64,000 nucleotides of DNA from positions 124,001-188,000 of IMG/VR virus record IMGVR_UViG_3300033977_000108; one strand, 5' to 3'. The translations under genes were made by a program, and so were the position numbers. This document shows positions 521-41,624 of this stretch, in pieces; within the stretch, counting starts at the first letter, position 1; each line of letters begins with the position of its first letter. The notes below the pieces were generated by a model. That model saw nothing but the letters and a program-made list of their open reading frames with translations, had not been told where the DNA came from and searched no databases.

Positions 521-597
521 TGGTGGCGGGGACTGGATTTGAACCAGTGATTTCTTGATTATGAGCCAAGCGAGATACCAGACTTCTCTACCCCGCT
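521..597 (-). tRNA. tRNA-Met(CAT), initiator-like
   Basis: Full cloverleaf, loop CTCATAA, TTCAAAT T-loop, encoded ACCA end, A1xC72 mismatch and A11:U24 pair. Confidence 0.92.
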
Positions 598-3276: not shown

Positions 3277-3561
3277 TTACTTCTTTGTTTCCAAAGACTT
3301 TATCTTTGCCTCTAAATCGGCAATGACTTTCTTTAAGTCGGCGATGACCTTTTCGTAATCGGACTTCAGCTTTGCAATCGTCTTCTCGTAATCGGCCACC
3401 AACTTGCCGCGCAATGCCGCTTCCTCGGCCCTGATTTTCGTTACCTCGGCCTTTACTCTTGCTTCAAAATCCTCTTCCAGTTGTTTCAAAGATACATGCT
3501 TCACACAGGCAACAATCACTGCCAATGCTAACAACACTGCCAAAGTGGTAATCCAAAACAT
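3277..3561 (-). CDS. Membrane-anchored coiled-coil protein (spanin-like architecture)
   Basis: N-terminal TM helix followed by heptad repeats DYEKTIAKLKSDYEKVIADL. Confidence 0.6.
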   Translation of the reverse strand: MFWITTLAVLLALAVIVACVKHVSLKQLEEDFEARVKAEVTKIRAEEAALRGKLVADYEKTIAKLKSDYEKVIADLKKVIADLEAKIKSLETKK

Positions 3562-3654
3562 GATAAACCTCTCTATTTCATGGGTTTCAGGTATCCTCTC
3601 CTGGTTAGTATAGCCGGAAAGGAGGGCCTGTTCTTACCTAACTCCGCGACTTTA

Positions 3655-3684
3655 ATCCTACCATATAACCGAACTCTATGGCAA
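3655..3684 (-). promoter_or_regulatory. Possible sigma70-type promoter
   Basis: TTGCCA-18 nt-TAGGAT with extended TGn in an intergenic gap. Confidence 0.3.
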
Positions 3685-3699
3685 GTAGCAAAATGATTA

Positions 3700-4881
3700 T
3701 TACGATGGTGGCGTGGATAAGGAAGGCATGCATCCTTCCTGGTTAGTATGGTTGCTTTGTCTTCCTTGTTCCACGGCTGCCTTATTGCGTAAAGCAGCCA
3801 TGATTTCATCGTAAAGTCTTTGGCACTCGCGCACTTCTATTTTCAAGGCGCGGGCGATGTCTCTAAATGGCTGCTCTATCATAAAGCGCGCATATAAGAT
3901 GTAGCGCTCAGAAGGGGACATCGAACGGAATATAGGATCCGCTGTATGATGCACCCAATTTATATCCATCTCATTCAAATCAAAGGATTTATTTATAAGG
4001 CTGAGGTCAGCTGCCCAAGCCTGACCTCGTGTATCTTGTAATTCGCCGCCGGCATCTGGGATTAGGCGTTCGTTTGGTAAGTCTTCATTGTCTATGTTCC
4101 CTGGTCGGTGATCCAATTGCATCAATCCATAGCCTACATCGGTTCCTTTTGCTTCTATGTCAAACAAAGACCGCTCTATAAAATCCTTTAGAAAGTACCT
4201 GAACCATCTCTGTACGACATAGACAAAGCCTATGGGCCCTTTTCCATACTTCTTTGGGCGGGGCGGCCATCTATGTTCCACCTTTTGATAACTGACTACC
4301 GTTTTCCGCTCTCTTTTTGCGGCCAGCAGACCATCGCGGCTAAGCAGGCGAATATACTTAGTACAATCGAACCCAAGTTTAGCACTGATTTCTCTTGGAA
4401 TGACCAGTTCTTCATTTTTGAGCCCATTGATTAGATTAATTACCCTCCCTAATTTATTTGAGTAATGCGGGTCGTACTTCCTAATGGCCCTCAAAAGACA
4501 GGTAACAAGTATTTCATAAATATCATCGGTATCCTGCTCCTTAAAGGCCAGATGCAGGAACTTGGCTGCCATAAACAAGGAGGCCCTATTGACTTTGTCC
4601 TTGCTGTTGATAAAGAACTTGAGAAACGCTATGGTATCACGGTTCCAACCATAAGGGGTAGAGGCCAGATGCCCGCGCGTAATCATGTCTAAGTACTTCA
4701 TCAAATAAGAATGAAAACAACGAATCAACTCGAATAGCCGCTCTTCACGCGCAGGGCCGTCCTCCATTAGGGCATACTCTAAGCCAAGCTGATTGATGTG
4801 TTTCACATCATTGAACTGATCAAACTTGAGTATCTCCCATTTGGCGGCATAATGCCAACTGCTAAGGGTTCGCCTGCGCAT
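3700..4881 (-). CDS. Phage sigma70-like transcription factor with internal insertion
   Basis: Region-2-like DIYEILVTCLLRAIRKYDP; region-4 HTH MSPSERYILYARF...FRDIARALKI...CQRLYDEIMAALR. Confidence 0.65.
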   Translation of the reverse strand: MRRRTLSSWHYAAKWEILKFDQFNDVKHINQLGLEYALMEDGPAREERLFELIRCFHSYLMKYLDMITRGHLASTPYGWNRDTIAFLKFFINSKDKVNRASLFMAAKFLHLAFKEQDTDDIYEILVTCLLRAIRKYDPHYSNKLGRVINLINGLKNEELVIPREISAKLGFDCTKYIRLLSRDGLLAAKRERKTVVSYQKVEHRWPPRPKKYGKGPIGFVYVVQRWFRYFLKDFIERSLFDIEAKGTDVGYGLMQLDHRPGNIDNEDLPNERLIPDAGGELQDTRGQAWAADLSLINKSFDLNEMDINWVHHTADPIFRSMSPSERYILYARFMIEQPFRDIARALKIEVRECQRLYDEIMAALRNKAAVEQGRQSNHTNQEGCMPSLSTPPS

Positions 4882-9022: not shown

Positions 9023-9547
9023 CTACTCCCGAAGGGCCCCATACATTTCCTGATTTATTACTTCATTGTTCAGCAAGAAGAACGCTAAAGTATCCTGAAT
9101 CAAAGGGTCAGACACGTAGTCCAGCCAATCTTCGTGAGATTTCAGATTGGGGATTGAGGTAGGATGGCACTTTACTCTGTAGATGAAAACGGATAGTTCA
9201 GTCTTCTTGGCAGGATGCTTCATCAACCATTCAGGGAATAGGTCTGGGTCGCTCTGCTGGGCCAGTAGGGCGTCCATAGTTTCCCTAAATGCTACAAAGT
9301 AGGTCTTGGTTGGCGCGTGCTTGATAGTCGCGATGTGCTCGTAAAAGCACACAGTATCGCTATCTTTGACATTCAAGCTTGGGTCATTGCTGATAATAGT
9401 TTTCAGGCGCGGGTCCCGCAGCCCTTGGCGCGGATAGACAGCTCCTTGCAAAGGATAGATACGCTGGTCTATCAGCATCAAACCCTGCAAGAACTCCTCG
9501 TTGACAGGCCTTCGGCCGAAGACACCAGTATCTCTAATGGTAGCCAT
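9023..9547 (-). CDS. Hypothetical protein
   Basis: 174-aa ORF in series. Confidence 0.65.
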   Translation of the reverse strand: MATIRDTGVFGRRPVNEEFLQGLMLIDQRIYPLQGAVYPRQGLRDPRLKTIISNDPSLNVKDSDTVCFYEHIATIKHAPTKTYFVAFRETMDALLAQQSDPDLFPEWLMKHPAKKTELSVFIYRVKCHPTSIPNLKSHEDWLDYVSDPLIQDTLAFFLLNNEVINQEMYGALRE

Positions 9548-9561
9548 AATGCTCTCCGATG

Positions 9562-9981
9562 CTATTCTGTGGAAGTTTGTAGCTTGGCCAGTTTGGCCTC
9601 AAGCTCGGCAACTTTAGCCGCCAGCTCGGCCAGTTGGGAAGGAACAACTACTTGATCCAATAGCGGCTTTAGGTCCACTTTAGAATGGGCTTCGGTATTC
9701 ACAGTATTAGCGGCATTCAGGGAAGCAGTCAGACCTTCTTTTGCTTTCTGGGCTGTGCCACGGGTCATTCCCGTGAAGCTCGGTCTTACGGCCTGGCCGC
9801 ACAAGCATACCAGCAACTCGGTCGGTATAGCACCCTCTTCCTGGATGTCAGAGCTTCCATAGCCGCCGGCTCTGAATGTATTGAATGTAAGCCTGGTGAA
9901 GTGCTGCGAACCGCAACGCGGGCAGACTACAGGCTTATTCATCTGCGCCATACGGTCTATGATTGATGGGGTGGCTGACAT
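9562..9981 (-). CDS. Zinc-ribbon plus coiled-coil protein
   Basis: CPRCGS...CLCG; C-terminal heptads; GGAGG RBS. Confidence 0.65.
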   Translation of the reverse strand: MSATPSIIDRMAQMNKPVVCPRCGSQHFTRLTFNTFRAGGYGSSDIQEEGAIPTELLVCLCGQAVRPSFTGMTRGTAQKAKEGLTASLNAANTVNTEAHSKVDLKPLLDQVVVPSQLAELAAKVAELEAKLAKLQTSTE

Positions 9982-21231: not shown

Positions 21232-21304
21232 TAGTCGGGGCCGGATTCGAACCGCCAACGCCTGCCTTTTTAGGACAGTGCTCTATCATTGGAGCTACCC
21301 GTCT
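21232..21304 (-). tRNA. tRNA-Phe-like with anticodon AAA (possibly degenerate)
   Basis: Cloverleaf, loop CTAAAAA, GGCGGTTCGAATCCG T-arm; single mismatches in acceptor and T stems; CCA incomplete (ACCG). Confidence 0.7.
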
Positions 21305-24989: not shown

Positions 24990-26171
24990 CTATTCATCCT
25001 CCTCGGGGATGGTATTCAGCATCAAATACCTTAACTCTGGGTATTCCATTGCTACGCATGGGGCCTTATAACGACAATAGCGACATTGCCATGCCCCAAT
25101 TATCTTATGCTTGGCTTCCCATTCTTTGTACTTTTTGTCGGTGATTAGCCCTTTGCCCTTCAGGTCTTCCACCTTCTCGGCCGTGTATTTGTATTGATAT
25201 TCAGCCGGAGGCATGTAGCCAGCAGGCAGTTCAGCTATTTCGAGCCGGACCGCTTCCCAGAAATCAGCACCGGCTTTCTTTGACGCCTCGTCTAAATTGC
25301 CTTCATTGTCGGCAACTAATAGTGGGGGCTGTACGCCCCTGAGCATCAGCCGTCTCTCAGCCTCATCTATGGCTCTTTGCCAGGCATCCTGTAAAGTCTT
25401 GTATCGTTGGTAGATATTCTCAATGGTAAATACTTTCCAAGGTATGCCATCTACAGATGGGTAATGTAAACCGTCGGTATCCATGTAAATACCGATGTCA
25501 AACTCTCTTCTATTGCGGCCGGTCCGGTCTACATAGAGGAGCTTGCCACCTAACTCACCATTGCCCATCAGGTCAAGTTGCGGCTGATACACTTGGATGC
25601 GATTCCTATGGCGCGCGGCGGCTTCAGGATTGTCGCGGGCCTCTTTGGCGCAAATCTCAATCGCGTCTTTCATACGCGCGCCTGTCCGCAGCTCATTCAA
25701 ATAGACTACGAGTTGCAGCATGTGCTCAAGCTTTGGTTTGCCCTCTTTCACGATGCGCTTACTGGCAAAATACCCATCAAAGCTTTTGATTTCAGCAATC
25801 AATCCTTGCTGTGTATCTTTGTCCAGGAGCACACCATCAAGCTCAAATGCCAGCTTTACGTCCTCAACCCAAACTTTTACGCCGGAAGCTACGCAGATGT
25901 TGGCGGCTATTGCTTGCTCGAAGACATCCTTTTCTACCGCCTTGCCTAAACGGACAATTTGACAGCCCGTGGCGTCCATTGGATTGGTGATAGGCTGCCC
26001 TGTCATTCTGAGATAACTGGCTCTATGGCACCCGCCCACAATGTCTGATTCGGTCTGGTCTAATAGGCAAGCGGAAGCTTCTGACGGCCAGACGGCGGGG
26101 AGCTGAGAGATACGGGGCTCCCAGTTCTCCATGGAAAGTAATATTTTGTCTAATTCCTCAAATACGCGCAT
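24990..26171 (-). CDS. Cas4-like PD-(D/E)XK exonuclease
   Basis: C.R..Y, ELDGV, AEIKS, Q...Y, WQCRYCRYKAPC. Confidence 0.8.
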   Translation of the reverse strand: MRVFEELDKILLSMENWEPRISQLPAVWPSEASACLLDQTESDIVGGCHRASYLRMTGQPITNPMDATGCQIVRLGKAVEKDVFEQAIAANICVASGVKVWVEDVKLAFELDGVLLDKDTQQGLIAEIKSFDGYFASKRIVKEGKPKLEHMLQLVVYLNELRTGARMKDAIEICAKEARDNPEAAARHRNRIQVYQPQLDLMGNGELGGKLLYVDRTGRNRREFDIGIYMDTDGLHYPSVDGIPWKVFTIENIYQRYKTLQDAWQRAIDEAERRLMLRGVQPPLLVADNEGNLDEASKKAGADFWEAVRLEIAELPAGYMPPAEYQYKYTAEKVEDLKGKGLITDKKYKEWEAKHKIIGAWQCRYCRYKAPCVAMEYPELRYLMLNTIPEEDE

Positions 26172-37405: not shown

Positions 37406-37697
37406 GGATGTCTTTTTCCTCCTTGGTTAGTTTATTCGTTGAATAAATCCTGAATGGTTCCGGCGGTTTCAAATACAGCCTCATCTTATTGCCCAGTTTC
37501 CTGTAAGTCTTGCGCCGTATGGCCGGCCGGACGACTATCCATCCGAACGGCATCTCGACAGGCTCTCTTCTTATTAGGGCGGCTATCCAGGCATCGCGTA
37601 CAACCTGAACGAATTTCCTGGACTTGCGCTTGGACAGCCCAAGAGTGCTGGCCAGCCATAGCGTCCCCTTGAACTCACTTTTTCCAGTAGTCGGCAA
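37374..37697 (-). CDS. HU/IHF-like DNA-binding protein
   Basis: LA..LGLSKR.....V......I..AL...EPVE.PFG...VRP..R pattern. Confidence 0.65.
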   Translation of the reverse strand: MPTTGKSEFKGTLWLASTLGLSKRKSRKFVQVVRDAWIAALIRREPVEMPFGWIVVRPAIRRKTYRKLGNKMRLYLKPPEPFRIYSTNKLTKEEKDILARRNPHSDT

Positions 37698-38243
37698 TGG
37701 TGACCTCCGTCTCGCCTTTTATAGTTTTGATGGTGTCGTGATAGACGGCATCCATACACCCTTTCACTATGGCCGCCACTGGCTCGGCATGATCTTCTCT
37801 GGCATGTACTATGATTTCATCATGTACGCAGGCGAGTAGATGGGCTTCGTAGATACGGGGCTTCCTTAGGTCTCCACCGTGTAAAGCCAGGCTAATCATA
37901 GACATAGCCCGCTTCAGCATGTCTACGCACTCGCCTTGGATGGGCTGATTGCCAGCCCAGCGGCCTACCTGTGCTCTCTTGGCTTCCTTATCGGGGTCAT
38001 CCTGGTCTATCTTGCGGTAGAACCGCTTCCTGCCGCGCCGTGTGGTAGAATACCAGAACTTCAATGCCATTGCCTTCTGGTCGTCCAGCCACTTACGGAG
38101 TTTGAAGGCTTTGGCGAACCATCTATCAATAAGCTCGCCGGCTTTATCATTGGTCATCCAGGCGGGATTAGGCTCGCCATTGGGCAGGAATTGCTTCTTG
38201 CCGCGATTGGCAAGTGCGGCTACGCGGGGAGCTTTGGCGCCAT
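37675..38243 (-). CDS. polA: DNA polymerase A, C-terminal subunit exon 2
   Basis: N.PIQG...D..K, motif C VHDE; upstream in-frame GAKAPRV completes motif B YG after splicing. Confidence 0.9.
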
Positions 38244-38908
38244 CAATATGTTACGATAGAACCGCATCCGTTCTATCTCTCTATGTTCCCATAGAGTTCA
38301 GACCATATCATTGCCCAATTGCTTGGGCACCAGGCGTTTCGGGAGCGCTGCTCCCTACTCCCTTGCGGGATGGTCGTTGCGCCTTCGGAAGATTATCCTG
38401 GCAGTGATGTTCTCGTCTGTGGCATTTTACGCATAACAACTCAAAGTTGTTATCCGTGTTATTGGTGCGGTCATGGTCTCTATGGTGAACATTCCATTGG
38501 GCATGGCTCGCATCCTGCAGGTCCTTGCCGCAGCGTTCGCAATAACGTCGCTCTGCCTTTATTTGACGTCTTCTTCGCATAAAGTAGCGTATGCCTGTCT
38601 TATATTGCGAATCATCCTGCCCGATATCATTGGTACCGCCACTCCCTACATTTATTATGTGCCCCTGCCTTAATCTATACGCCTTCATTACTCGTCTCAT
38701 TGTCTCTCTTTTATTGTCTTCTTTACAGAGCACGCAGACTTTCTGAGCCGGGCCTGTTGGCGTATAGCTTTTGTAGCATCTGATACATATTCTCGTAGGA
38801 AACGATACCATAAATCCTCCGCTTGGTTCAGGATTGTCCGTTCCGGACTTCCCCTGAGTTAACCTGGTTCTTCTATGCTTATTATAGCGTAGCCTCGTGT
38901 TTGAAAAC
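38244..38908 (-). mobile_element. Group I intron (IA-like) carrying an HNH endonuclease
   Basis: P1 with U.G splice pair; P AACTCAGGGGAA, Q AATCCTGAACCAAGC, R GCGCAACGACCA, S GATATGGTCTGAAC (P7 GACCA/TGGTC); terminal G at 38244. Confidence 0.9.
38308..38811 (-). CDS. Intron-encoded HNH homing endonuclease
   Basis: CERCG...VHHRDHDRTNN...NFELLCVKCHRREH; own GGAGG RBS. Confidence 0.9.
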   Translation of the reverse strand: MVSFPTRICIRCYKSYTPTGPAQKVCVLCKEDNKRETMRRVMKAYRLRQGHIINVGSGGTNDIGQDDSQYKTGIRYFMRRRRQIKAERRYCERCGKDLQDASHAQWNVHHRDHDRTNNTDNNFELLCVKCHRREHHCQDNLPKAQRPSRKGVGSSAPETPGAQAIGQ

Positions 38909-39287
38909 AAGGGACGCCAAATGTGATGTTCTTCGTCTGGCTCCGCAGCGTGACGAATTGGGCATGATCGGGATGGCTTTCGTCCTTATAGGCTTTGTAG
39001 AAGATGTCATAGCCAATACCTTCTATGTCGCTGGTCATAAAGCAATGGATGTCCTTATCCGAGTTCAGCGCATTAGTTAGCCAGGTGTCTCTTGAACAAT
39101 CAGCCATACTCTTGATTTCTATCTGTGAATAGTCGGCATCCAGTATCTTCCATCCTGGCGCCGCGCGTATTGCTTCCCTGGTGCTGGGCACCCGCCAATA
39201 GATGGCATACCTGCCATTCTGGCGGGGGCCTTCAAGCCAGAACTCTTTCTTGCCTATGTTCCCGAGATACTTGCTTGGTGCTGCCAA
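38909..39287 (-). CDS. polA: DNA polymerase A, C-terminal subunit exon 1
   Basis: REAIRAAPGWKILDADYSQIE (motif A), DIH, RSQTKNITFGVP (motif B start). Confidence 0.9.
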
Positions 39288-39538
39288 AGCGCCTCCCTGT
39301 CATACTTATAAACAAACTTCGCGCGCTCTACCCGGAACGGACCTACTTCGGCGAACTTGAGTTTGGGATCCAGTTCCAATTGGCGCTCCAGGCCGGTGAA
39401 GACAGCTTCGAGTTCCTTGCTCGTCGGCAGTGGCACAACTTTCTTCCCTGTGTGGTATATCACACGCCAGTTCTCCTCTTGGAGCCACACAAGGATGTAG
39501 TTCACGCACACCTTTTTCCTTCGGTACGTTTGTTTCAC
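39254..39538 (-). CDS. Hypothetical protein inside the polA split
   Basis: Coupled ORF. Confidence 0.6.
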   Translation of the reverse strand: MKQTYRRKKVCVNYILVWLQEENWRVIYHTGKKVVPLPTSKELEAVFTGLERQLELDPKLKFAEVGPFRVERAKFVYKYDREALWQHQASISGT

Positions 39539-39771
39539 TAATCCTCTTCTGGTAGAAGCTCTCGTAATCTATCGCAGGCGGCGTCCCAACGATTTACATC
39601 GGCCTGTAGGGTGGCCTTTTGCTTGGCCACAATGGTGGAGGCATCAAGCCCCTGGCTTAGATTGAATACTACATTGCTGAGGAAGGTACCAGCTAATCCT
39701 ACTTCGCTAATAGCCTTCCTCAATCTGGGAGGAATACTGTGGACTTTATAAGCTTTATTCTGTTGGGGCAT
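39538..39771 (-). CDS. Hypothetical protein inside the polA split
   Basis: Start refined to MPQQNK. Confidence 0.55.
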   Translation of the reverse strand: MPQQNKAYKVHSIPPRLRKAISEVGLAGTFLSNVVFNLSQGLDASTIVAKQKATLQADVNRWDAACDRLRELLPEED

Positions 39772-40255
39772 CTTTCTTCTTGCCTGCCGGCGACCCAAAT
39801 CCGACATGGCGTTCCTCCGTTTCGTTGTCGTCCTCAGTCTCAAAGAACCGGGTCAGGTCTCCTGAGCCACTGGCGACTGCTTCCATGTGGGCCTTCTCGG
39901 CTCTCATCATGTTGCGCTGATCGCGCCGCGTAAAGATAGACTCCAGCACTACTTGTCCTGTCTCATTTCTAAAGGGCATCCACTGCAGTTCCTGGGCAAC
40001 CAGTGGGAAAACGCCAGCTGCCTGCTCCAGGAATTCCGTTTGCAGTTTCACTGATTTGGCGGACGCCGCCAGTGCTTCAGAGCCAATCACCTGTGCATCG
40101 CGAAAGGCTCTATCAGCTGCACGCGCCGTCTTTACTTCCAGGTCTCTGGCTATCTCCAGGTCGGCGAATAAATGTAGCAGCTTCTCTTTCTGTTCTAATT
40201 CCTTTATGTCATCCACGATTAGTTGGATGATCTTGAATGTTCGCTTAATTGCCAT
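39755..40255 (-). CDS. Helical hypothetical protein inside the polA split
   Basis: 166-aa ORF overlapping the polA-N stop. Confidence 0.65.
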   Translation of the reverse strand: MAIKRTFKIIQLIVDDIKELEQKEKLLHLFADLEIARDLEVKTARAADRAFRDAQVIGSEALAASAKSVKLQTEFLEQAAGVFPLVAQELQWMPFRNETGQVVLESIFTRRDQRNMMRAEKAHMEAVASGSGDLTRFFETEDDNETEERHVGFGSPAGKKKDAPTE

Positions 40256-41624
40256 AGGGTTCTAACTCCAATCCTTTCAGCGCGTTGGCGCCAAGTGTCT
40301 CTACGACTTTGAGTTCTTCATCGGTAGGTTGCTCCCTGACATCCTCAGGTCTTGGTATCTGTTGAATGTCAGAGGCATACCTTCCTGTGGAGGTGCCTCG
40401 TCCTATTTGCCTCTTTGCCGTCGGCGTATCCCCAGAGCCCATTTGTTCCATGTGGGGTATCAGGGTGCCTAGAACGGGGTGCCGCTTATCCAGCAAGTTC
40501 TGTCCGTAGGTGGATGTTATCTTCTGGCATTCCGTGTATTCAGCCAGCAGTTGGGCTATTTCACTGTCCAGGGCGGCAAGGGTCTCCCTCTTTACATCCT
40601 TCAACTTTATGCCCATCAGTTCCAGGGCTTCCAGCTTTTGGGAGGGCGAGTCAAGGTCAAAGCTGTCTACTACCGGCATTATCGTCAATTGCTTTCGGCC
40701 TTTTAGGTTCAGGGCGTCGTTGTATAACTTGGTTACCGCCTCTTCTATTTCCTTCTGGCGCCGGACATAAGGAAGAATAGACAGCATTAGGATGTCCTCG
40801 TCCAGGCGTATGCCTGTTGCTGTTGCTCGCTCACGGTATTCCTTTTCTACGACGCCTTCCATCTCGGCTGTAACATGTATCTGTAGGAATTCGTCTCTGG
40901 CGGCTCTGCCAAGGTTCCATTGGGAGAGTGCCTTTGTCTGCGCTTCATAGATGGGGAACAACAGGAAGACATCGCGCGCGGCATAATAGAGCATCTCTTT
41001 GGTGAATTTTCCAATGGCAGCAAAGTTAGCGAAGGAATCCCTTACCGTCTTGGTGATTATATAATGGGGTGGGTATTTCATTGCCAGGTCTTTGATGCTT
41101 ACTCTTACGCCCGGGTAGCCGGCGGTGATAAGCTGCTCCGCCAACATAGTATCAAATAGCCTGCAAGTAGAGCCTCCCAACCGGATATTGTATTTCTGCA
41201 GCGCGAACTCATAGTCAAAGACAAGGTTCTGGCCTATCAATAAGGCCTTGTCGTTGCCTATCCTGGGCTCCAGGAATAAAGCTAACCCTGGGTCTATCAA
41301 GTAGATACATTCCGGTACGCCCCATTGAAGCAGGACTACTTCTGATGTGGCACCCAAAGGATCCAGGCCTTCTTTACCACCTGCCCCGCTGGTTTCACTA
41401 TCGTAGCCGTGGATAGAAAACCGGTCCATGTATTTGAAGATAGGGTCAAGATCCGTCGGCGAGTTGACAAGCAATAAGTGGTCGGACTCTACGACGCCCG
41501 GGTCAAAGTACTTGTCAAACCAATCCGGGCTGCCTATTACTTGATAGTTTATCTCTATCTTGCTCTCATAAGCAGCCACGTTTTCAAAGCCGGTGAGCTT
41601 CTTGTAGCTTTTGAAGCCTCTCAT
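40245..41624 (-). CDS. polA: DNA polymerase A, N-terminal subunit (3'-5' exonuclease + thumb)
   Basis: ExoI YDSET, ExoII NLVFD, ExoIII YAARD, LDSP.Q, TGR...QQIPR; lacks motifs A-C. Confidence 0.9.
   Translation of the reverse strand: MRGFKSYKKLTGFENVAAYESKIEINYQVIGSPDWFDKYFDPGVVESDHLLLVNSPTDLDPIFKYMDRFSIHGYDSETSGAGGKEGLDPLGATSEVVLLQWGVPECIYLIDPGLALFLEPRIGNDKALLIGQNLVFDYEFALQKYNIRLGGSTCRLFDTMLAEQLITAGYPGVRVSIKDLAMKYPPHYIITKTVRDSFANFAAIGKFTKEMLYYAARDVFLLFPIYEAQTKALSQWNLGRAARDEFLQIHVTAEMEGVVEKEYRERATATGIRLDEDILMLSILPYVRRQKEIEEAVTKLYNDALNLKGRKQLTIMPVVDSFDLDSPSQKLEALELMGIKLKDVKRETLAALDSEIAQLLAEYTECQKITSTYGQNLLDKRHPVLGTLIPHMEQMGSGDTPTAKRQIGRGTSTGRYASDIQQIPRPEDVREQPTDEELKVVETLGANALKGLELEPYGN

What the first reader, a model, noticed from the sequence alone, without database searches (positions are those of the whole stretch)
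38244..38908. Group I intron in polA with exactly predictable splice sites
Seen: exon CCUU pairs with intron GAGG, giving the U.G pair at the 5' splice site (38909/38908). P, Q, R and S elements are present, with a compensatory P7 (GACCA/TGGTC instead of GACTA/TAGTC) and a terminal G at 38244. Splicing joins CCT-T and AT-GGC to give KNITFGVPYG, restoring motif B with Phe at the position equivalent to E. coli Pol I 762, and a 315-aa subunit.
Basis: seen in the sequence. Interest (0 to 1): 0.6.

Follow-up and report, generated by a model that had tools for sequence, protein, structure and literature searches.

The report
Self-splicing intron in phage DNA polymerase
The only DNA polymerase gene of an uncultured 205-kb peat phage is interrupted, inside the codon of a key active-site tyrosine, by a 665-base group I intron that carries its own HNH homing-endonuclease gene; this is a well-supported but fairly ordinary kind of phage element.

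Summary
Window 38244-38908 (- strand, 665 nt) has every sequence feature of a group I intron of subgroup IA2. It sits in the C-terminal subunit gene of a split family A DNA polymerase, in a 204.6-kb phage genome with terminal repeats.

- **RNA model evidence:** Rfam's general model hits only below its cut-off (29.9 bits against 50). A model built solely from 10 ORF-less relatives in other viral contigs hits both halves of the element (72.6 bits, E 2.5e-16; 42 bits, E 7.7e-9). It hits nowhere else in the genome.
- **Fold:** P3, P4, P5, P6/P6a, P7, P7.1, P7.2, P8 and P9 are all intact. The family shows strong covariation: 92.5% of cells paired against 66.9% in shuffles.
- **Splice sites:** intronless homologues read FGVPYGAKAP without interruption. 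Their alignment to the window leaves out exactly one Tyr, the split codon T(38909)+AT(38243-38242).
- **Same-site relative:** a related contig (L025) has the orthologous intron at the same position, with a compensatory change in P1.
- **Intron ORF:** an HNH endonuclease gene (38308-38811) lies in the P6a loop.

Splicing itself is not shown, because no RNA data exist. This is a new member of a known kind, with modest interest.

The parts
40245..41624 (-). polA N-terminal subunit gene (459 aa): 3'-5' exonuclease plus the first third of the polymerase domain
   Evidence: Pfam DNA_pol_A_exo1 (46.5 bits) and DNA_pol_A profile positions 14-132. 45% identical to the polA-N of relative L025.
38909..39287 (-). 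polA C-terminal subunit, exon 1. It starts at TTG 39287 (GGGAGG 4 nt upstream), holds motif A (DADYSQIE), and ends with ...ITFGVP plus the first base of the Tyr codon.
   Evidence: Pfam DNA_pol_A positions 141-198. tblastn of P0002 residues 5-124 maps to 39266-38910.
38244..38908 (-). Group I (IA2) intron, 665 nt
   Evidence: RF00028 at 29.9 bits, E 3e-5. Family model R1 gives 72.6 and 42 bits. Boundaries come from homologue alignment and from the same-site intron in L025.
38893..38912 (-). P1: exon CCUU and intron GU (38912-38907) pair with ACGAGG (38898-38893). U38909 and G38896 form the wobble at the 5' splice site.
   Evidence: RNAfold. P1 covaries with the exon in L025: CCGU/GCGG.
38862..38867 (-). 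P3, 5' strand. It pairs with 38335-38330.
   Evidence: 14/14 sequences keep standard pairs at 5 of the pairs, with 2-4 pair types at four of them. RNAalifold predicts it independently.
38828..38857 (-). P4-P5-P4' hairpin (the P and Q elements): P4 is 38857-38852/38833-38828 and P5 is 38847-38845/38839-38837.
   Evidence: About 90% identical to the introns of phages DES1 and PPWS1. Invariant in the family.
38814..38826 (-). P6 (38826-38825 with 38383-38382) and the P6a 5' strand CGGAGGAU (38821-38814, pairing with 38393-38386). P6a contains the endonuclease gene's Shine-Dalgarno GGAGG.
   Evidence: Pair table. P6 C-G changes to G-C in three relatives.
38308..38811 (-). HNH homing-endonuclease ORF (167 aa plus stop). 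It starts in the P6a loop and runs through P6a', P7, P7.1, P7.2, P3' and P8. Its TGA lies in J8/7.
   Evidence: PHROG 25862 HNH endonuclease, E 8e-32. Pfam HNH 22.4 bits against a cut-off of 21.4. 43% identical to the intron ORF of phage DES1.
38301..38375 (-). 3' core: P7 (38375-38371/38305-38301), P7.1 (38370-38367/38362-38359), a GUA linker, P7.2 (38355-38350/38346-38341), P3' (38335-38330) and P8 (38329-38323/38318-38312).
   Evidence: R1 match at 72.6 bits. Pair tables with compensatory changes.
38255..38296 (-). P9 (38296-38290/38285-38279, GGAA loop) and P9.1 (38277-38270/38262-38255)
   Evidence: RNAfold z = -5.3. P9 is paired in 14/14 sequences with up to 4 pair types. P9.1 covaries with L025.
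38244..38244 (-). Terminal G of the intron (omega G), which marks the 3' splice site
   Evidence: Sequence. It lies 4 nt after the family-conserved AACAU, as in DES1 and L012.
37675..38243 (-). polA C-terminal subunit, exon 2 (AT GGC GCC ..., then motif C HDEI; stop at 37675-37677)
   Evidence: Pfam DNA_pol_A positions 232-380, 81.7 bits. tblastn of P0002 residues 126-297 maps to 38241-37678.

Best explanation
The element is a mobile group I intron of subgroup IA2 in the polA-C gene of an uncultured jumbo phage.

Proposed mechanism (inferred from the anatomy):
1. In the pre-mRNA, the guide sequence GAGG pairs with the exon end CCUU to form P1, with a U-G wobble at the splice site.
2. The core (P3-P9, including the P3/P7 pseudoknot and P7.1/P7.2) folds.
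3. A free guanosine attacks after U38909.
4. The terminal G38244 then takes the G site, and the exons are ligated. This recreates a UAU codon for the Tyr of motif B (equivalent to E. coli Y766) and gives an open frame of 315 codons.

Unspliced RNA would yield a 142-aa product, because the exon-1 frame runs to a TAA in J3/4 and loses the rest of motif B and motif C. This is the only recognisable DNA polymerase in the genome, so the phage must splice.

The intron carries an HNH endonuclease gene in the P6a loop. That enzyme presumably nicks or cuts intronless polA alleles of co-infecting relatives near the insertion site, so that repair copies the intron in (homing). Its ribosome-binding site lies inside P6a and its reading frame overlaps the 3' half of the ribozyme. 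Folding for splicing and translation of the endonuclease are therefore likely to compete.

Shown here: the anatomy, family membership, the splice-site positions by homology, and the presence of the ORF. Inferred: catalysis, homing, and the coupling between translation and splicing.
For: - Sequence and Rfam: RF00028 sub-threshold hit spanning 38279-38935, E 3e-5.
- Independent model: R1, built from other contigs only, hits 38278-38403 (72.6 bits, E 2.5e-16) and 38720-38869 (42 bits, E 7.7e-9). It hits nothing else in the window or in the 204.6-kb genome.
- RNAalifold on 10 ORF-less relatives predicts P3, P4, P5, P6, P6a, P7.1, P7.2, P8 and P9. Of 43 pairs, 27 keep pairing through changes on both sides.
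- Formal pair count over 23 family matches: 92.5% of cells paired against 66.9% in shuffles; covariation score 0.568 against 0.173 (0/500 shuffles reach it) and 0.03-0.10 for slid partners.
- Every one of these helices is a standard helix in the window, and P7 is compensated (C-G in place of U-A).
- Splice sites: intronless P0002, P0004 and P0006 read FGVPYG without a break. tblastn leaves out only the Tyr. The syntenic intronless allele L022 reads GTG CCT TAT GGA.
- L025 has the orthologous intron after CCG T and before AT GGC GCC, with P1 compensated.
- HNH ORF.
- Only polymerase: PF00476 is found in three pieces only, and there is no PF00136 match.
- Literature: IA2 introns with an HNH ORF that starts in P6a and spans P7 are shown to self-splice in other phage polA genes (PMC3428280).
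Against: - No RNA evidence: the only public run holding the sequence is a DNA run, probably the source sample.
- RF00028 stays below its gathering score (29.9 and 26.2 bits against 50).
- No convincing P10 pairing between the guide region and the first bases of exon 2 was seen by eye.
- P5 is only 3 conserved base pairs.
- The candidate P2 (CUAU/AUAG) overlaps the outer P1 stem that RNAfold prefers, so the P1/P2 region is not settled.
- The start codon of polA-C is a TTG.
Confidence: 0.88

Rival explanations
1. The intron is a decayed, splicing-dead relic. The polA-C gene would then be a pseudogene, or the polymerase would be assembled from separate exon-1 and exon-2 polypeptides, making a three-piece enzyme.
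For: polA in this clade is already tolerated as separate subunits. Gene callers produced a separate 160-aa exon-2 protein, P0001. RF00028 scores below its cut-off. There is no RNA evidence.
Against: All core helices are intact, and the one P7 difference is compensated on both strands. All 58 columns that are invariant in the family alignment are kept in the window. A break here would cut the O-helix between FGVP and YG and leave the Tyr codon split. No other polymerase exists in a genome assembled at about 61x depth. The exon-2 ORF called by software starts 28 codons after the homology begins.
Confidence: 0.07
2. It is a group I intron, but it splices at other positions than 38909/38908 and 38244/38243.
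For: In relatives the terminal G lies at variable distances (3-6 nt) after the conserved AACAU, and the 5' splice site is often followed by UAA rather than GUU. P10 is not evident.
Against: Only this pair of sites satisfies three conditions together: a U that can form a U-G pair in P1, a G as the last intron base, and an open frame that reproduces FGVPYGAKAP with no extra or missing residue. L025 uses the same positions with a compensated P1. The nearest alternative, exon 1 ending at 38906, would add a Cys inside the F-G-x-x-Y-G spacing that all homologues keep.
Confidence: 0.03
3. It is a free-standing HNH endonuclease gene inserted between two polymerase gene fragments, or an intein, and not an RNA intron.
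For: An HNH ORF lies between two polA fragments. GenBank records of relatives annotate just that arrangement.
Against: Ribozyme halves flank and overlap the ORF and score strongly with a structure model. The ORF is out of frame with exon 1, and the exon-1 frame meets a stop 16 codons into the insert, which excludes an intein. ORF-less versions of the same RNA exist in many contigs.
Confidence: 0.02

Closest known systems
IA2 group I introns with HNH genes in phage family A DNA polymerase genes: Pf-WMP3 (I-PfoP3I), PhiI/W31 (I-TslI), SPO1/SP82/Bastille (I-HmuI, I-HmuII, I-BasI), phiL7
   Same: The host gene family is the same, and the insertion lies in a highly conserved catalytic motif. P7.1 and P7.2 are joined by GUA. 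The HNH ORF begins in P6a and runs into P7 and beyond. A ribosome-binding site sits in intron structure (PMC3428280, compared).
   Different: The insertion site differs. The sites listed in PMC3428280 are E. coli positions 674, 676 and 881; here it is inside the codon equivalent to Y766 of motif B. Here the ORF reaches further, to J8/7. The host is a 205-kb uncultured phage whose polA is split into two subunit genes. Splicing and nicking are not tested here.
Unannotated introns of the same sequence family in isolates: Xanthomonas phages DES1 and MK21, Ralstonia phage BOESR1, Pectobacterium phage PPWS1
   Same: The P3-P9 core is the same: the P4-P5 stretch is about 90% identical to DES1 and PPWS1, and R1 scores 79-151 bits on these loci. 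DES1's HNH protein is 43% identical. DES1, MK21 and BOESR1 also interrupt motif B. BOESR1 uses the same CCUU/GAGG P1.
   Different: The positions differ by 1 to 6 nt within motif B: BOESR1 lies between the Leu and Tyr codons, DES1 in the codon before Tyr, and MK21 one codon earlier. PPWS1 sits at the SSSNP/NLQN site. MK21 and BOESR1 have no ORF in P6. Their records list two polymerase CDSs rather than an intron.
Orthologous intron in metagenomic relative L025 (contig of P0003)
   Same: The gene is the same (polA-N 45% identical and the intervening 166/172-aa gene 46% identical) and so is the insertion point (CCN T | AT GGC GCC). The P2-containing 5' region and the P9.1 hairpin also match.
   Different: L025 has a short ORF-less P6. 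Instead it carries an insert of about 530 nt in the P5 loop, with a 177-aa ORF on the opposite strand. P1, P7, P7.2, P8 and P9.1 differ by compensated changes.
Phage T4 td / nrdB / sunY introns (classic IA2 phage introns)
   Same: They share the IA2 architecture, with an endonuclease ORF looped out of the core in a nucleotide-metabolism or replication gene. This rests on prior knowledge and was not tested here.
   Different: The host genes differ, the endonuclease families differ (GIY-YIG for I-TevI and I-TevII), and no detectable sequence similarity was sought or found.

Membership tests
Group I intron (catalytic RNA) | Conserved core helices P3-P9, including the P3/P7 pseudoknot, in the canonical order | tested here: met
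   All helices were located and are standard pairs in the window. RNAalifold on relatives predicts the nested ones. The family pair count gives 92.5% paired and a covariation score of 0.568 against 0.173 in shuffles. P7 covaries in three forms.
Group I intron (catalytic RNA) | 5' splice site after a U that forms a U-G wobble in P1 with an internal guide sequence | tested here: met
   U38909 pairs with G38896 within CCUUGU/ACGAGG. The pairing is compensated in L025 as CCGU/GCGG.
Group I intron (catalytic RNA) | Terminal G (omega G) at the 3' splice site | tested here: met
   G38244. The position is fixed by homologue alignment and by L025.
Group I intron (catalytic RNA) | Score at or above the Rfam RF00028 gathering threshold | tested here: not met
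   29.9 bits (local search) and 26.2 bits (genome search) against 50. The related intron of PPWS1, whose record annotates an intron-mobility HNH endonuclease, also scores only 32.2 bits, so the general model is weak for this family when an ORF is inserted.
Group I intron (catalytic RNA) | Guanosine-dependent self-splicing with exon ligation | not testable with these tools
   No RNA run holds the sequence. This needs in vitro transcription or cDNA.
Subgroup IA2 | Extra helices P7.1 and P7.2 between P7 and P3', joined by G-U-A (criterion as given in PMC3428280) | tested here: met
   The stretch reads UCCC-GCAA-GGGA, then GUA, then GGGAGC-AGC-GCUCCC, at 38370-38341. Both helices covary in the family.
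HNH homing endonuclease (intron-encoded) | HNH (beta-beta-alpha-metal) motif with flanking CxxC pairs, encoded inside the intron | tested here: met
   Pfam HNH 22.4 bits against a cut-off of 21.4. PHROG 25862, E 8e-32. 43% identity to DES1's intron ORF, including CERC...HH...N...C..CH.
HNH homing endonuclease (intron-encoded) | Site-specific nicking or cleavage of the intronless allele near the insertion site | not testable with these tools
No solved relative was found by sequence.
Family A DNA polymerase (host gene) | Motifs A, B and C in order once the exons are read in succession | tested here: met
   Pfam DNA_pol_A positions 141-198 (exon 1) and 232-380 (exon 2), searched exon by exon. Motif B is completed only across the junction.

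The most novel reading that the evidence does not exclude
The more unusual feature may be the host gene rather than the intron. This phage clade splits its only family A polymerase inside the polymerase domain, after the NLQNIP-like motif and before motif A, into two subunit genes. A conserved gene of unknown function (166 aa) separates them, and it could be an accessory subunit. The published PolA split cited here is at the exo/pol boundary (PMC10201439). Two further features add to this. The intron sits at a polA site (the Tyr766 codon) that is not among the three sites listed in PMC3428280. Its endonuclease frame overlaps the whole 3' half of the ribozyme, so translation and splicing could act as a mutually exclusive switch.
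Probability: 0.3. Interest if true: 0.55.

Novelty: new member of a known kind. Interest (0 to 1): 0.3.

Why it matters
- **Annotation:** gene callers split this polymerase subunit into fragments. The database holds a 160-aa exon-2 protein, and GenBank records of several cultured phages with the same intron family list two "DNA polymerase" CDSs and no intron. Recognising the intron restores the correct 315-codon gene. It also gives a family-specific RNA model that finds such introns where Rfam's general model falls below its threshold.
- **Biology:** motif B (the O-helix) of phage polA emerges as a hot spot. One intron family occupies at least five neighbouring positions there. At one site the same ribozyme has taken up different endonuclease genes in different loops, which is a clean natural example of separate intron and endonuclease mobility.
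- **Scope:** none of this changes what is known about how group I introns work.

Tried and rejected
- **Rfam at gathering thresholds:** only three tRNAs, no intron.
- **RNA evidence:** the run search found one DNA run from a peat metagenome, probably the source, and no RNA run. Laying it showed one 125.8-kb contig identical over 37600-39400, with no intronless variant and no joints. This confirms the assembly only and is not independent.
- **PDB sequence search with the HNH protein:** nothing meaningful, best E 0.54.
- **P10:** I looked by eye for pairing between the bases 5' of the guide sequence and the start of exon 2 and found none convincing.
- **A second intron as the cause of the polA-N/polA-C split:** rejected. 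Neither RF00028 nor R1 hits there. The three intervening ORFs overlap start-to-stop like ordinary genes. One of them is conserved in L025.
- **tblastn of the gene upstream of polA-C in L022 against the window:** no significant match.
- **My first helix table:** it picked wrong arms for P5, P6, P7, P7.1 and P8 and was redone with anchored contexts.
- **Joined exons:** Exons were searched separately by reference, and the junction was judged from intronless homologues. No complex prediction was run for the two polymerase subunits, because the C subunit would have needed the joined sequence.

Full report
**Setting.** The window is bases 124001-188000 of a 204,633-bp IMG/VR virus record with direct terminal repeats, so it comes from a complete jumbo-phage genome. 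The only public run that holds the region is a peat metagenome. The window is a replication module, with all genes on the - strand: ribonucleotide reductase, primase/helicase, a methyltransferase, an exonuclease V/Dda-like helicase, a processivity factor and an SNF2-like helicase. Its polymerase has only distant relatives among deposited phages, about 26% identity to crAss-like phage polA.

**The host gene.** Pfam DNA_pol_A is found in three pieces and nowhere else in the genome, and no family B polymerase is present.
- 40245-41624 (459 aa) carries the 3'-5' exonuclease and profile positions 14-133.
- 38909-39287 carries positions 141-198, including motif A (DADYSQIE).
- 37675-38243 carries positions 232-380, including motif C (HDEI).

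The first break is a true gene split. Three small overlapping ORFs lie in it, and one of them is 46% identical to the gene at the same place in a relative. The second break is the finding under review.

**Check of the observation.** On the - strand, exon 1 ends ...TTT GGC GTC CCT T at 38909, and the insert begins with G at 38908. Exon CCUU (38912-38909) pairs with GAGG (38896-38893), and U38909 pairs with G38896 as a wobble.
- RNAfold of the first 54 nt gives this same helix, continued by two pairs into the intron (CCUUGU/ACGAGG) and by a 6-bp outer stem.
- The insert ends with G38244 and is followed by AT GGC GCC AAA.
- The classic P/Q elements (P4, UCAGGG/UCCUGA) and R/S elements (P7 with its junctions) are present. 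P7 reads GACCA/UGGUC where most relatives have GACUA/UAGUC.

**Is it more than chance?** Rfam's general model RF00028 finds the element only below threshold: 29.9 bits against a gathering score of 50, E 3e-5 in a local search, and no hit at gathering level.

A BLAST search showed that the P4-P5 stretch is about 90% identical to unannotated sequence in Xanthomonas phage DES1 and Pectobacterium phage PPWS1. In both, an HNH gene sits between the two parts of a gene: two polymerase CDSs in PPWS1 and two hypothetical CDSs in DES1. A pattern scan of viral contigs then gave 17 loci with the same core, many of them ORF-less introns of roughly 250 nt.

- **RNAalifold.** From 10 ORF-less members, RNAalifold predicted P3, P4, P5, P6, P6a, P7.1, P7.2, P8 and P9 by itself. 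Of 43 pairs, 27 are kept through changes on both sides.
- **Independent model.** A covariance model built from these 10 sequences only, without the window, hits the window at 38278-38403 (72.6 bits, E 2.5e-16) and 38720-38869 (42 bits, E 7.7e-9). These are the two halves of the ribozyme on either side of the inserted ORF. It hits nothing else in the window or the genome.
- **Pair count.** On 23 family matches, 92.5% of pair cells are standard pairs against 66.9% in shuffles. The covariation score is 0.568 against 0.173 (0 of 500 shuffles reach it) and 0.03-0.10 when partners are slid. That alignment was fitted to the model, so it leans towards the structure. The MAFFT-based tables, which were not fitted, show the same picture. 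P3 is paired in 14 of 14 sequences at five of its positions, four of them with 2-4 pair types. P9 is paired in 14 of 14 at all seven positions, five of which vary (up to 4 types). P7 occurs in three compensated forms.

**Anatomy in the window.**

| Element | Coordinates (- strand) |
|---|---|
| P1 | 38912-38907 / 38898-38893 |
| Candidate P2 (CUAU/AUAG) | overlaps the outer P1 stem, so this part is unsettled |
| P3 | 38867-38862 / 38335-38330 |
| P4 | 38857-38852 / 38833-38828 |
| P5 | 38847-38845 / 38839-38837 |
| P6 | 38826-38825 / 38383-38382 |
| P6a | 38821-38814 / 38393-38386 |
| P7 | 38375-38371 / 38305-38301 |
| P7.1 | 38370-38367 / 38362-38359 |
| GUA linker | between P7.1 and P7.2 |
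| P7.2 | 38355-38350 / 38346-38341 |
| P8 | 38329-38323 / 38318-38312 (GCAA loop) |
| P9 | 38296-38290 / 38285-38279 (GGAA loop) |
| P9.1 | 38277-38270 / 38262-38255 |
| Tail | UAACAUAUUG, ending at G38244 |

P7.1 and P7.2 joined by GUA is the criterion used in the literature for subgroup IA2 (PMC3428280).

**Splice sites.** Each exon was searched by reference.
- A word search with exon 2 found intronless proteins of 297-316 aa (P0002, P0004, P0006) that read ...FGVPYGA... without interruption.
- tblastn of P0002 against the window maps residues 5-124 to 39266-38910 and residues 126-297 to 38241-37678. Exactly one residue, Tyr125, is unaccounted for. It corresponds to the split codon T(38909) + AT(38243-38242).
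- The syntenic intronless locus L022 (polA-C, two small genes, then an SNF2-like helicase, as in the window) reads GTG CCT TAT GGA at this place.
- No other combination gives an open frame with the conserved F-G-x-x-Y-G spacing while also having a U before the 5' site and a G before the 3' site (reasoned).
- P0002's FGVPY aligns with FGVLY of Taq polymerase. From prior knowledge this is Taq F667/Y671 = E. coli F762/Y766.

**An orthologous intron.** The contig of P0003 (L025) has the same gene order: polA-N 45% identical, a 172-aa gene 46% identical, then polA-C. Its polA-C is interrupted at the same point...GGT GTT CCG T | TAAUCC... and ...GUAACAUAAGUG | AT GGC GCC....
- The exon there has CCGU and the guide GCGG, against CCUU/GAGG here. 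A synonymous exon change is matched by a change in the intron.
- P7, P7.2, P8 and P9.1 also differ by compensated changes.
- L025 has a short ORF-less P6. It carries a large insert in the P5 loop with a 177-aa ORF on the opposite strand. The ribozyme and its endonuclease genes therefore have separate histories.

**The intron ORF.** ATG 38811 is preceded by GGAGG, and the ORF runs to TGA 38310-38308 (167 aa).
- It matches PHROG 25862 (HNH endonuclease, E 8e-32) and Pfam HNH just above its cut-off. It is 43% identical to DES1's intron ORF, with an N-terminal CxxC...CxxC and a C-terminal CERC...HH...N...C..CH motif.
- It is out of frame with exon 1. The exon-1 frame stops at a TAA in J3/4.
- The Shine-Dalgarno sequence is the 5' strand of P6a.
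- The last 40 or so codons are the ribozyme's P6a', P7, P7.1, P7.2, P3' and P8. PHROG homology ends at residue 140. A ribosome translating the endonuclease would therefore unfold the catalytic core. This is an inference, but similar arrangements are discussed for PhiI, W31 and Pf-WMP3 (PMC3428280).

**Comparison with what is known.** Group I introns, mostly IA-type and often with HNH genes, are common in phage DNA polymerase genes (PMC3428280, PMC11878797).
- The polA sites listed in PMC3428280 are E. coli positions 674, 676 and 881. The present site, inside codon 766, is not among them. I did not find it described, but my literature search was limited.
- In sequence databases the same intron family occupies several neighbouring positions of motif B:

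| Locus | Position in motif B |
|---|---|
| L019 (T7-like) | in the Phe codon of KTF|IYG |
| MK21 | between codons +6 and +7 |
| DES1 | in codon +7 |
| BOESR1 | between Leu and Tyr, with the same CCUU/GAGG P1 |
| This phage and L025 | in the Tyr codon |

- PPWS1 carries the intron at the SSSNP/NLQN site, which I take to correspond to the 674-type site.

The element is therefore a new member of a known kind.

**What remains open.** Splicing and endonuclease activity are inferred, not shown, because no RNA data exist. The DNA run only confirms the assembly. The TTG start of polA-C rests on a GGGAGG 4 nt upstream and on the N-termini of homologues. The P1/P2 region has two alternative folds, and no P10 was found.

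**Verdict.** Interest is modest: the intron itself is ordinary for phages. Three side features are worth a note: the insertion site, the ORF overlap with the ribozyme's 3' half, and above all the split of polA inside its polymerase domain with a conserved intervening gene.

Noticed in passing
window 39254-41624 (- strand): polA is split inside the polymerase domain. The N subunit (40245-41624) ends just after an IQQIPR (NLQNIP-like) motif, and the C subunit starts at 39287. Three ORFs without family hits lie between them: 166 aa (39755-40255), 101 aa (39538-39843) and 94 aa (39254-39538). The 166-aa protein is 46% identical to the gene at the same place in relative L025, so it may be a polymerase accessory protein. 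The published PolA split (PMC10201439) is at the exo/pol boundary, not here.
   Followed up: partly
L025 3290-4047; ORF at 3319-3852 (- strand of the locus): The orthologous intron at the same Tyr codon in a relative has no ORF in P6. It has an insert of about 530 nt in the P5 loop that encodes a 177-aa protein on the antisense strand. Pfam gives only weak helix-turn-helix hits, and a C..C...HH...C..CH pattern is visible by eye. An antisense endonuclease gene inside a phage group I intron is unusual.
   Followed up: partly
L027 (Ralstonia phage BOESR1) 1400-1640; L028 (Xanthomonas phage MK21) 1370-1650; L001 (Xanthomonas phage DES1) 2470-3175; L019 900-1500: Introns of the same family interrupt motif B of the DNA polymerase at four other positions within about 20 nt of each other. 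The three GenBank records (L027, L028, L001) list two CDSs (named DNA polymerase in BOESR1 and MK21, hypothetical protein in DES1) and no intron. L019 is an unannotated viral contig.
   Followed up: partly
L018 727-909 (-) and L012 6008-6208 (-): Each of these viral contigs has a second, weaker match to the family model R1 (72 and 50 bits). These phages therefore carry more than one intron of this family.
   Followed up: no
window 524-597, 2394-2466, 21232-21304 (all - strand): Three tRNA genes reach Rfam's gathering score (60.4, 45.0 and 42.5 bits).
   Followed up: no
window 24990-26171 (- strand): A 393-aa ORF has a weak PHROG match (E 6e-9) to a family labelled 'CRISPR/Cas system associated'.
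   Followed up: no
L004 (contig of 202,880 bp) 9404-9712 (- strand): Another phage contig of about 200 kb carries an ORF-less intron of the same family in a very AT-rich region. The interrupted gene was not identified.
   Followed up: no
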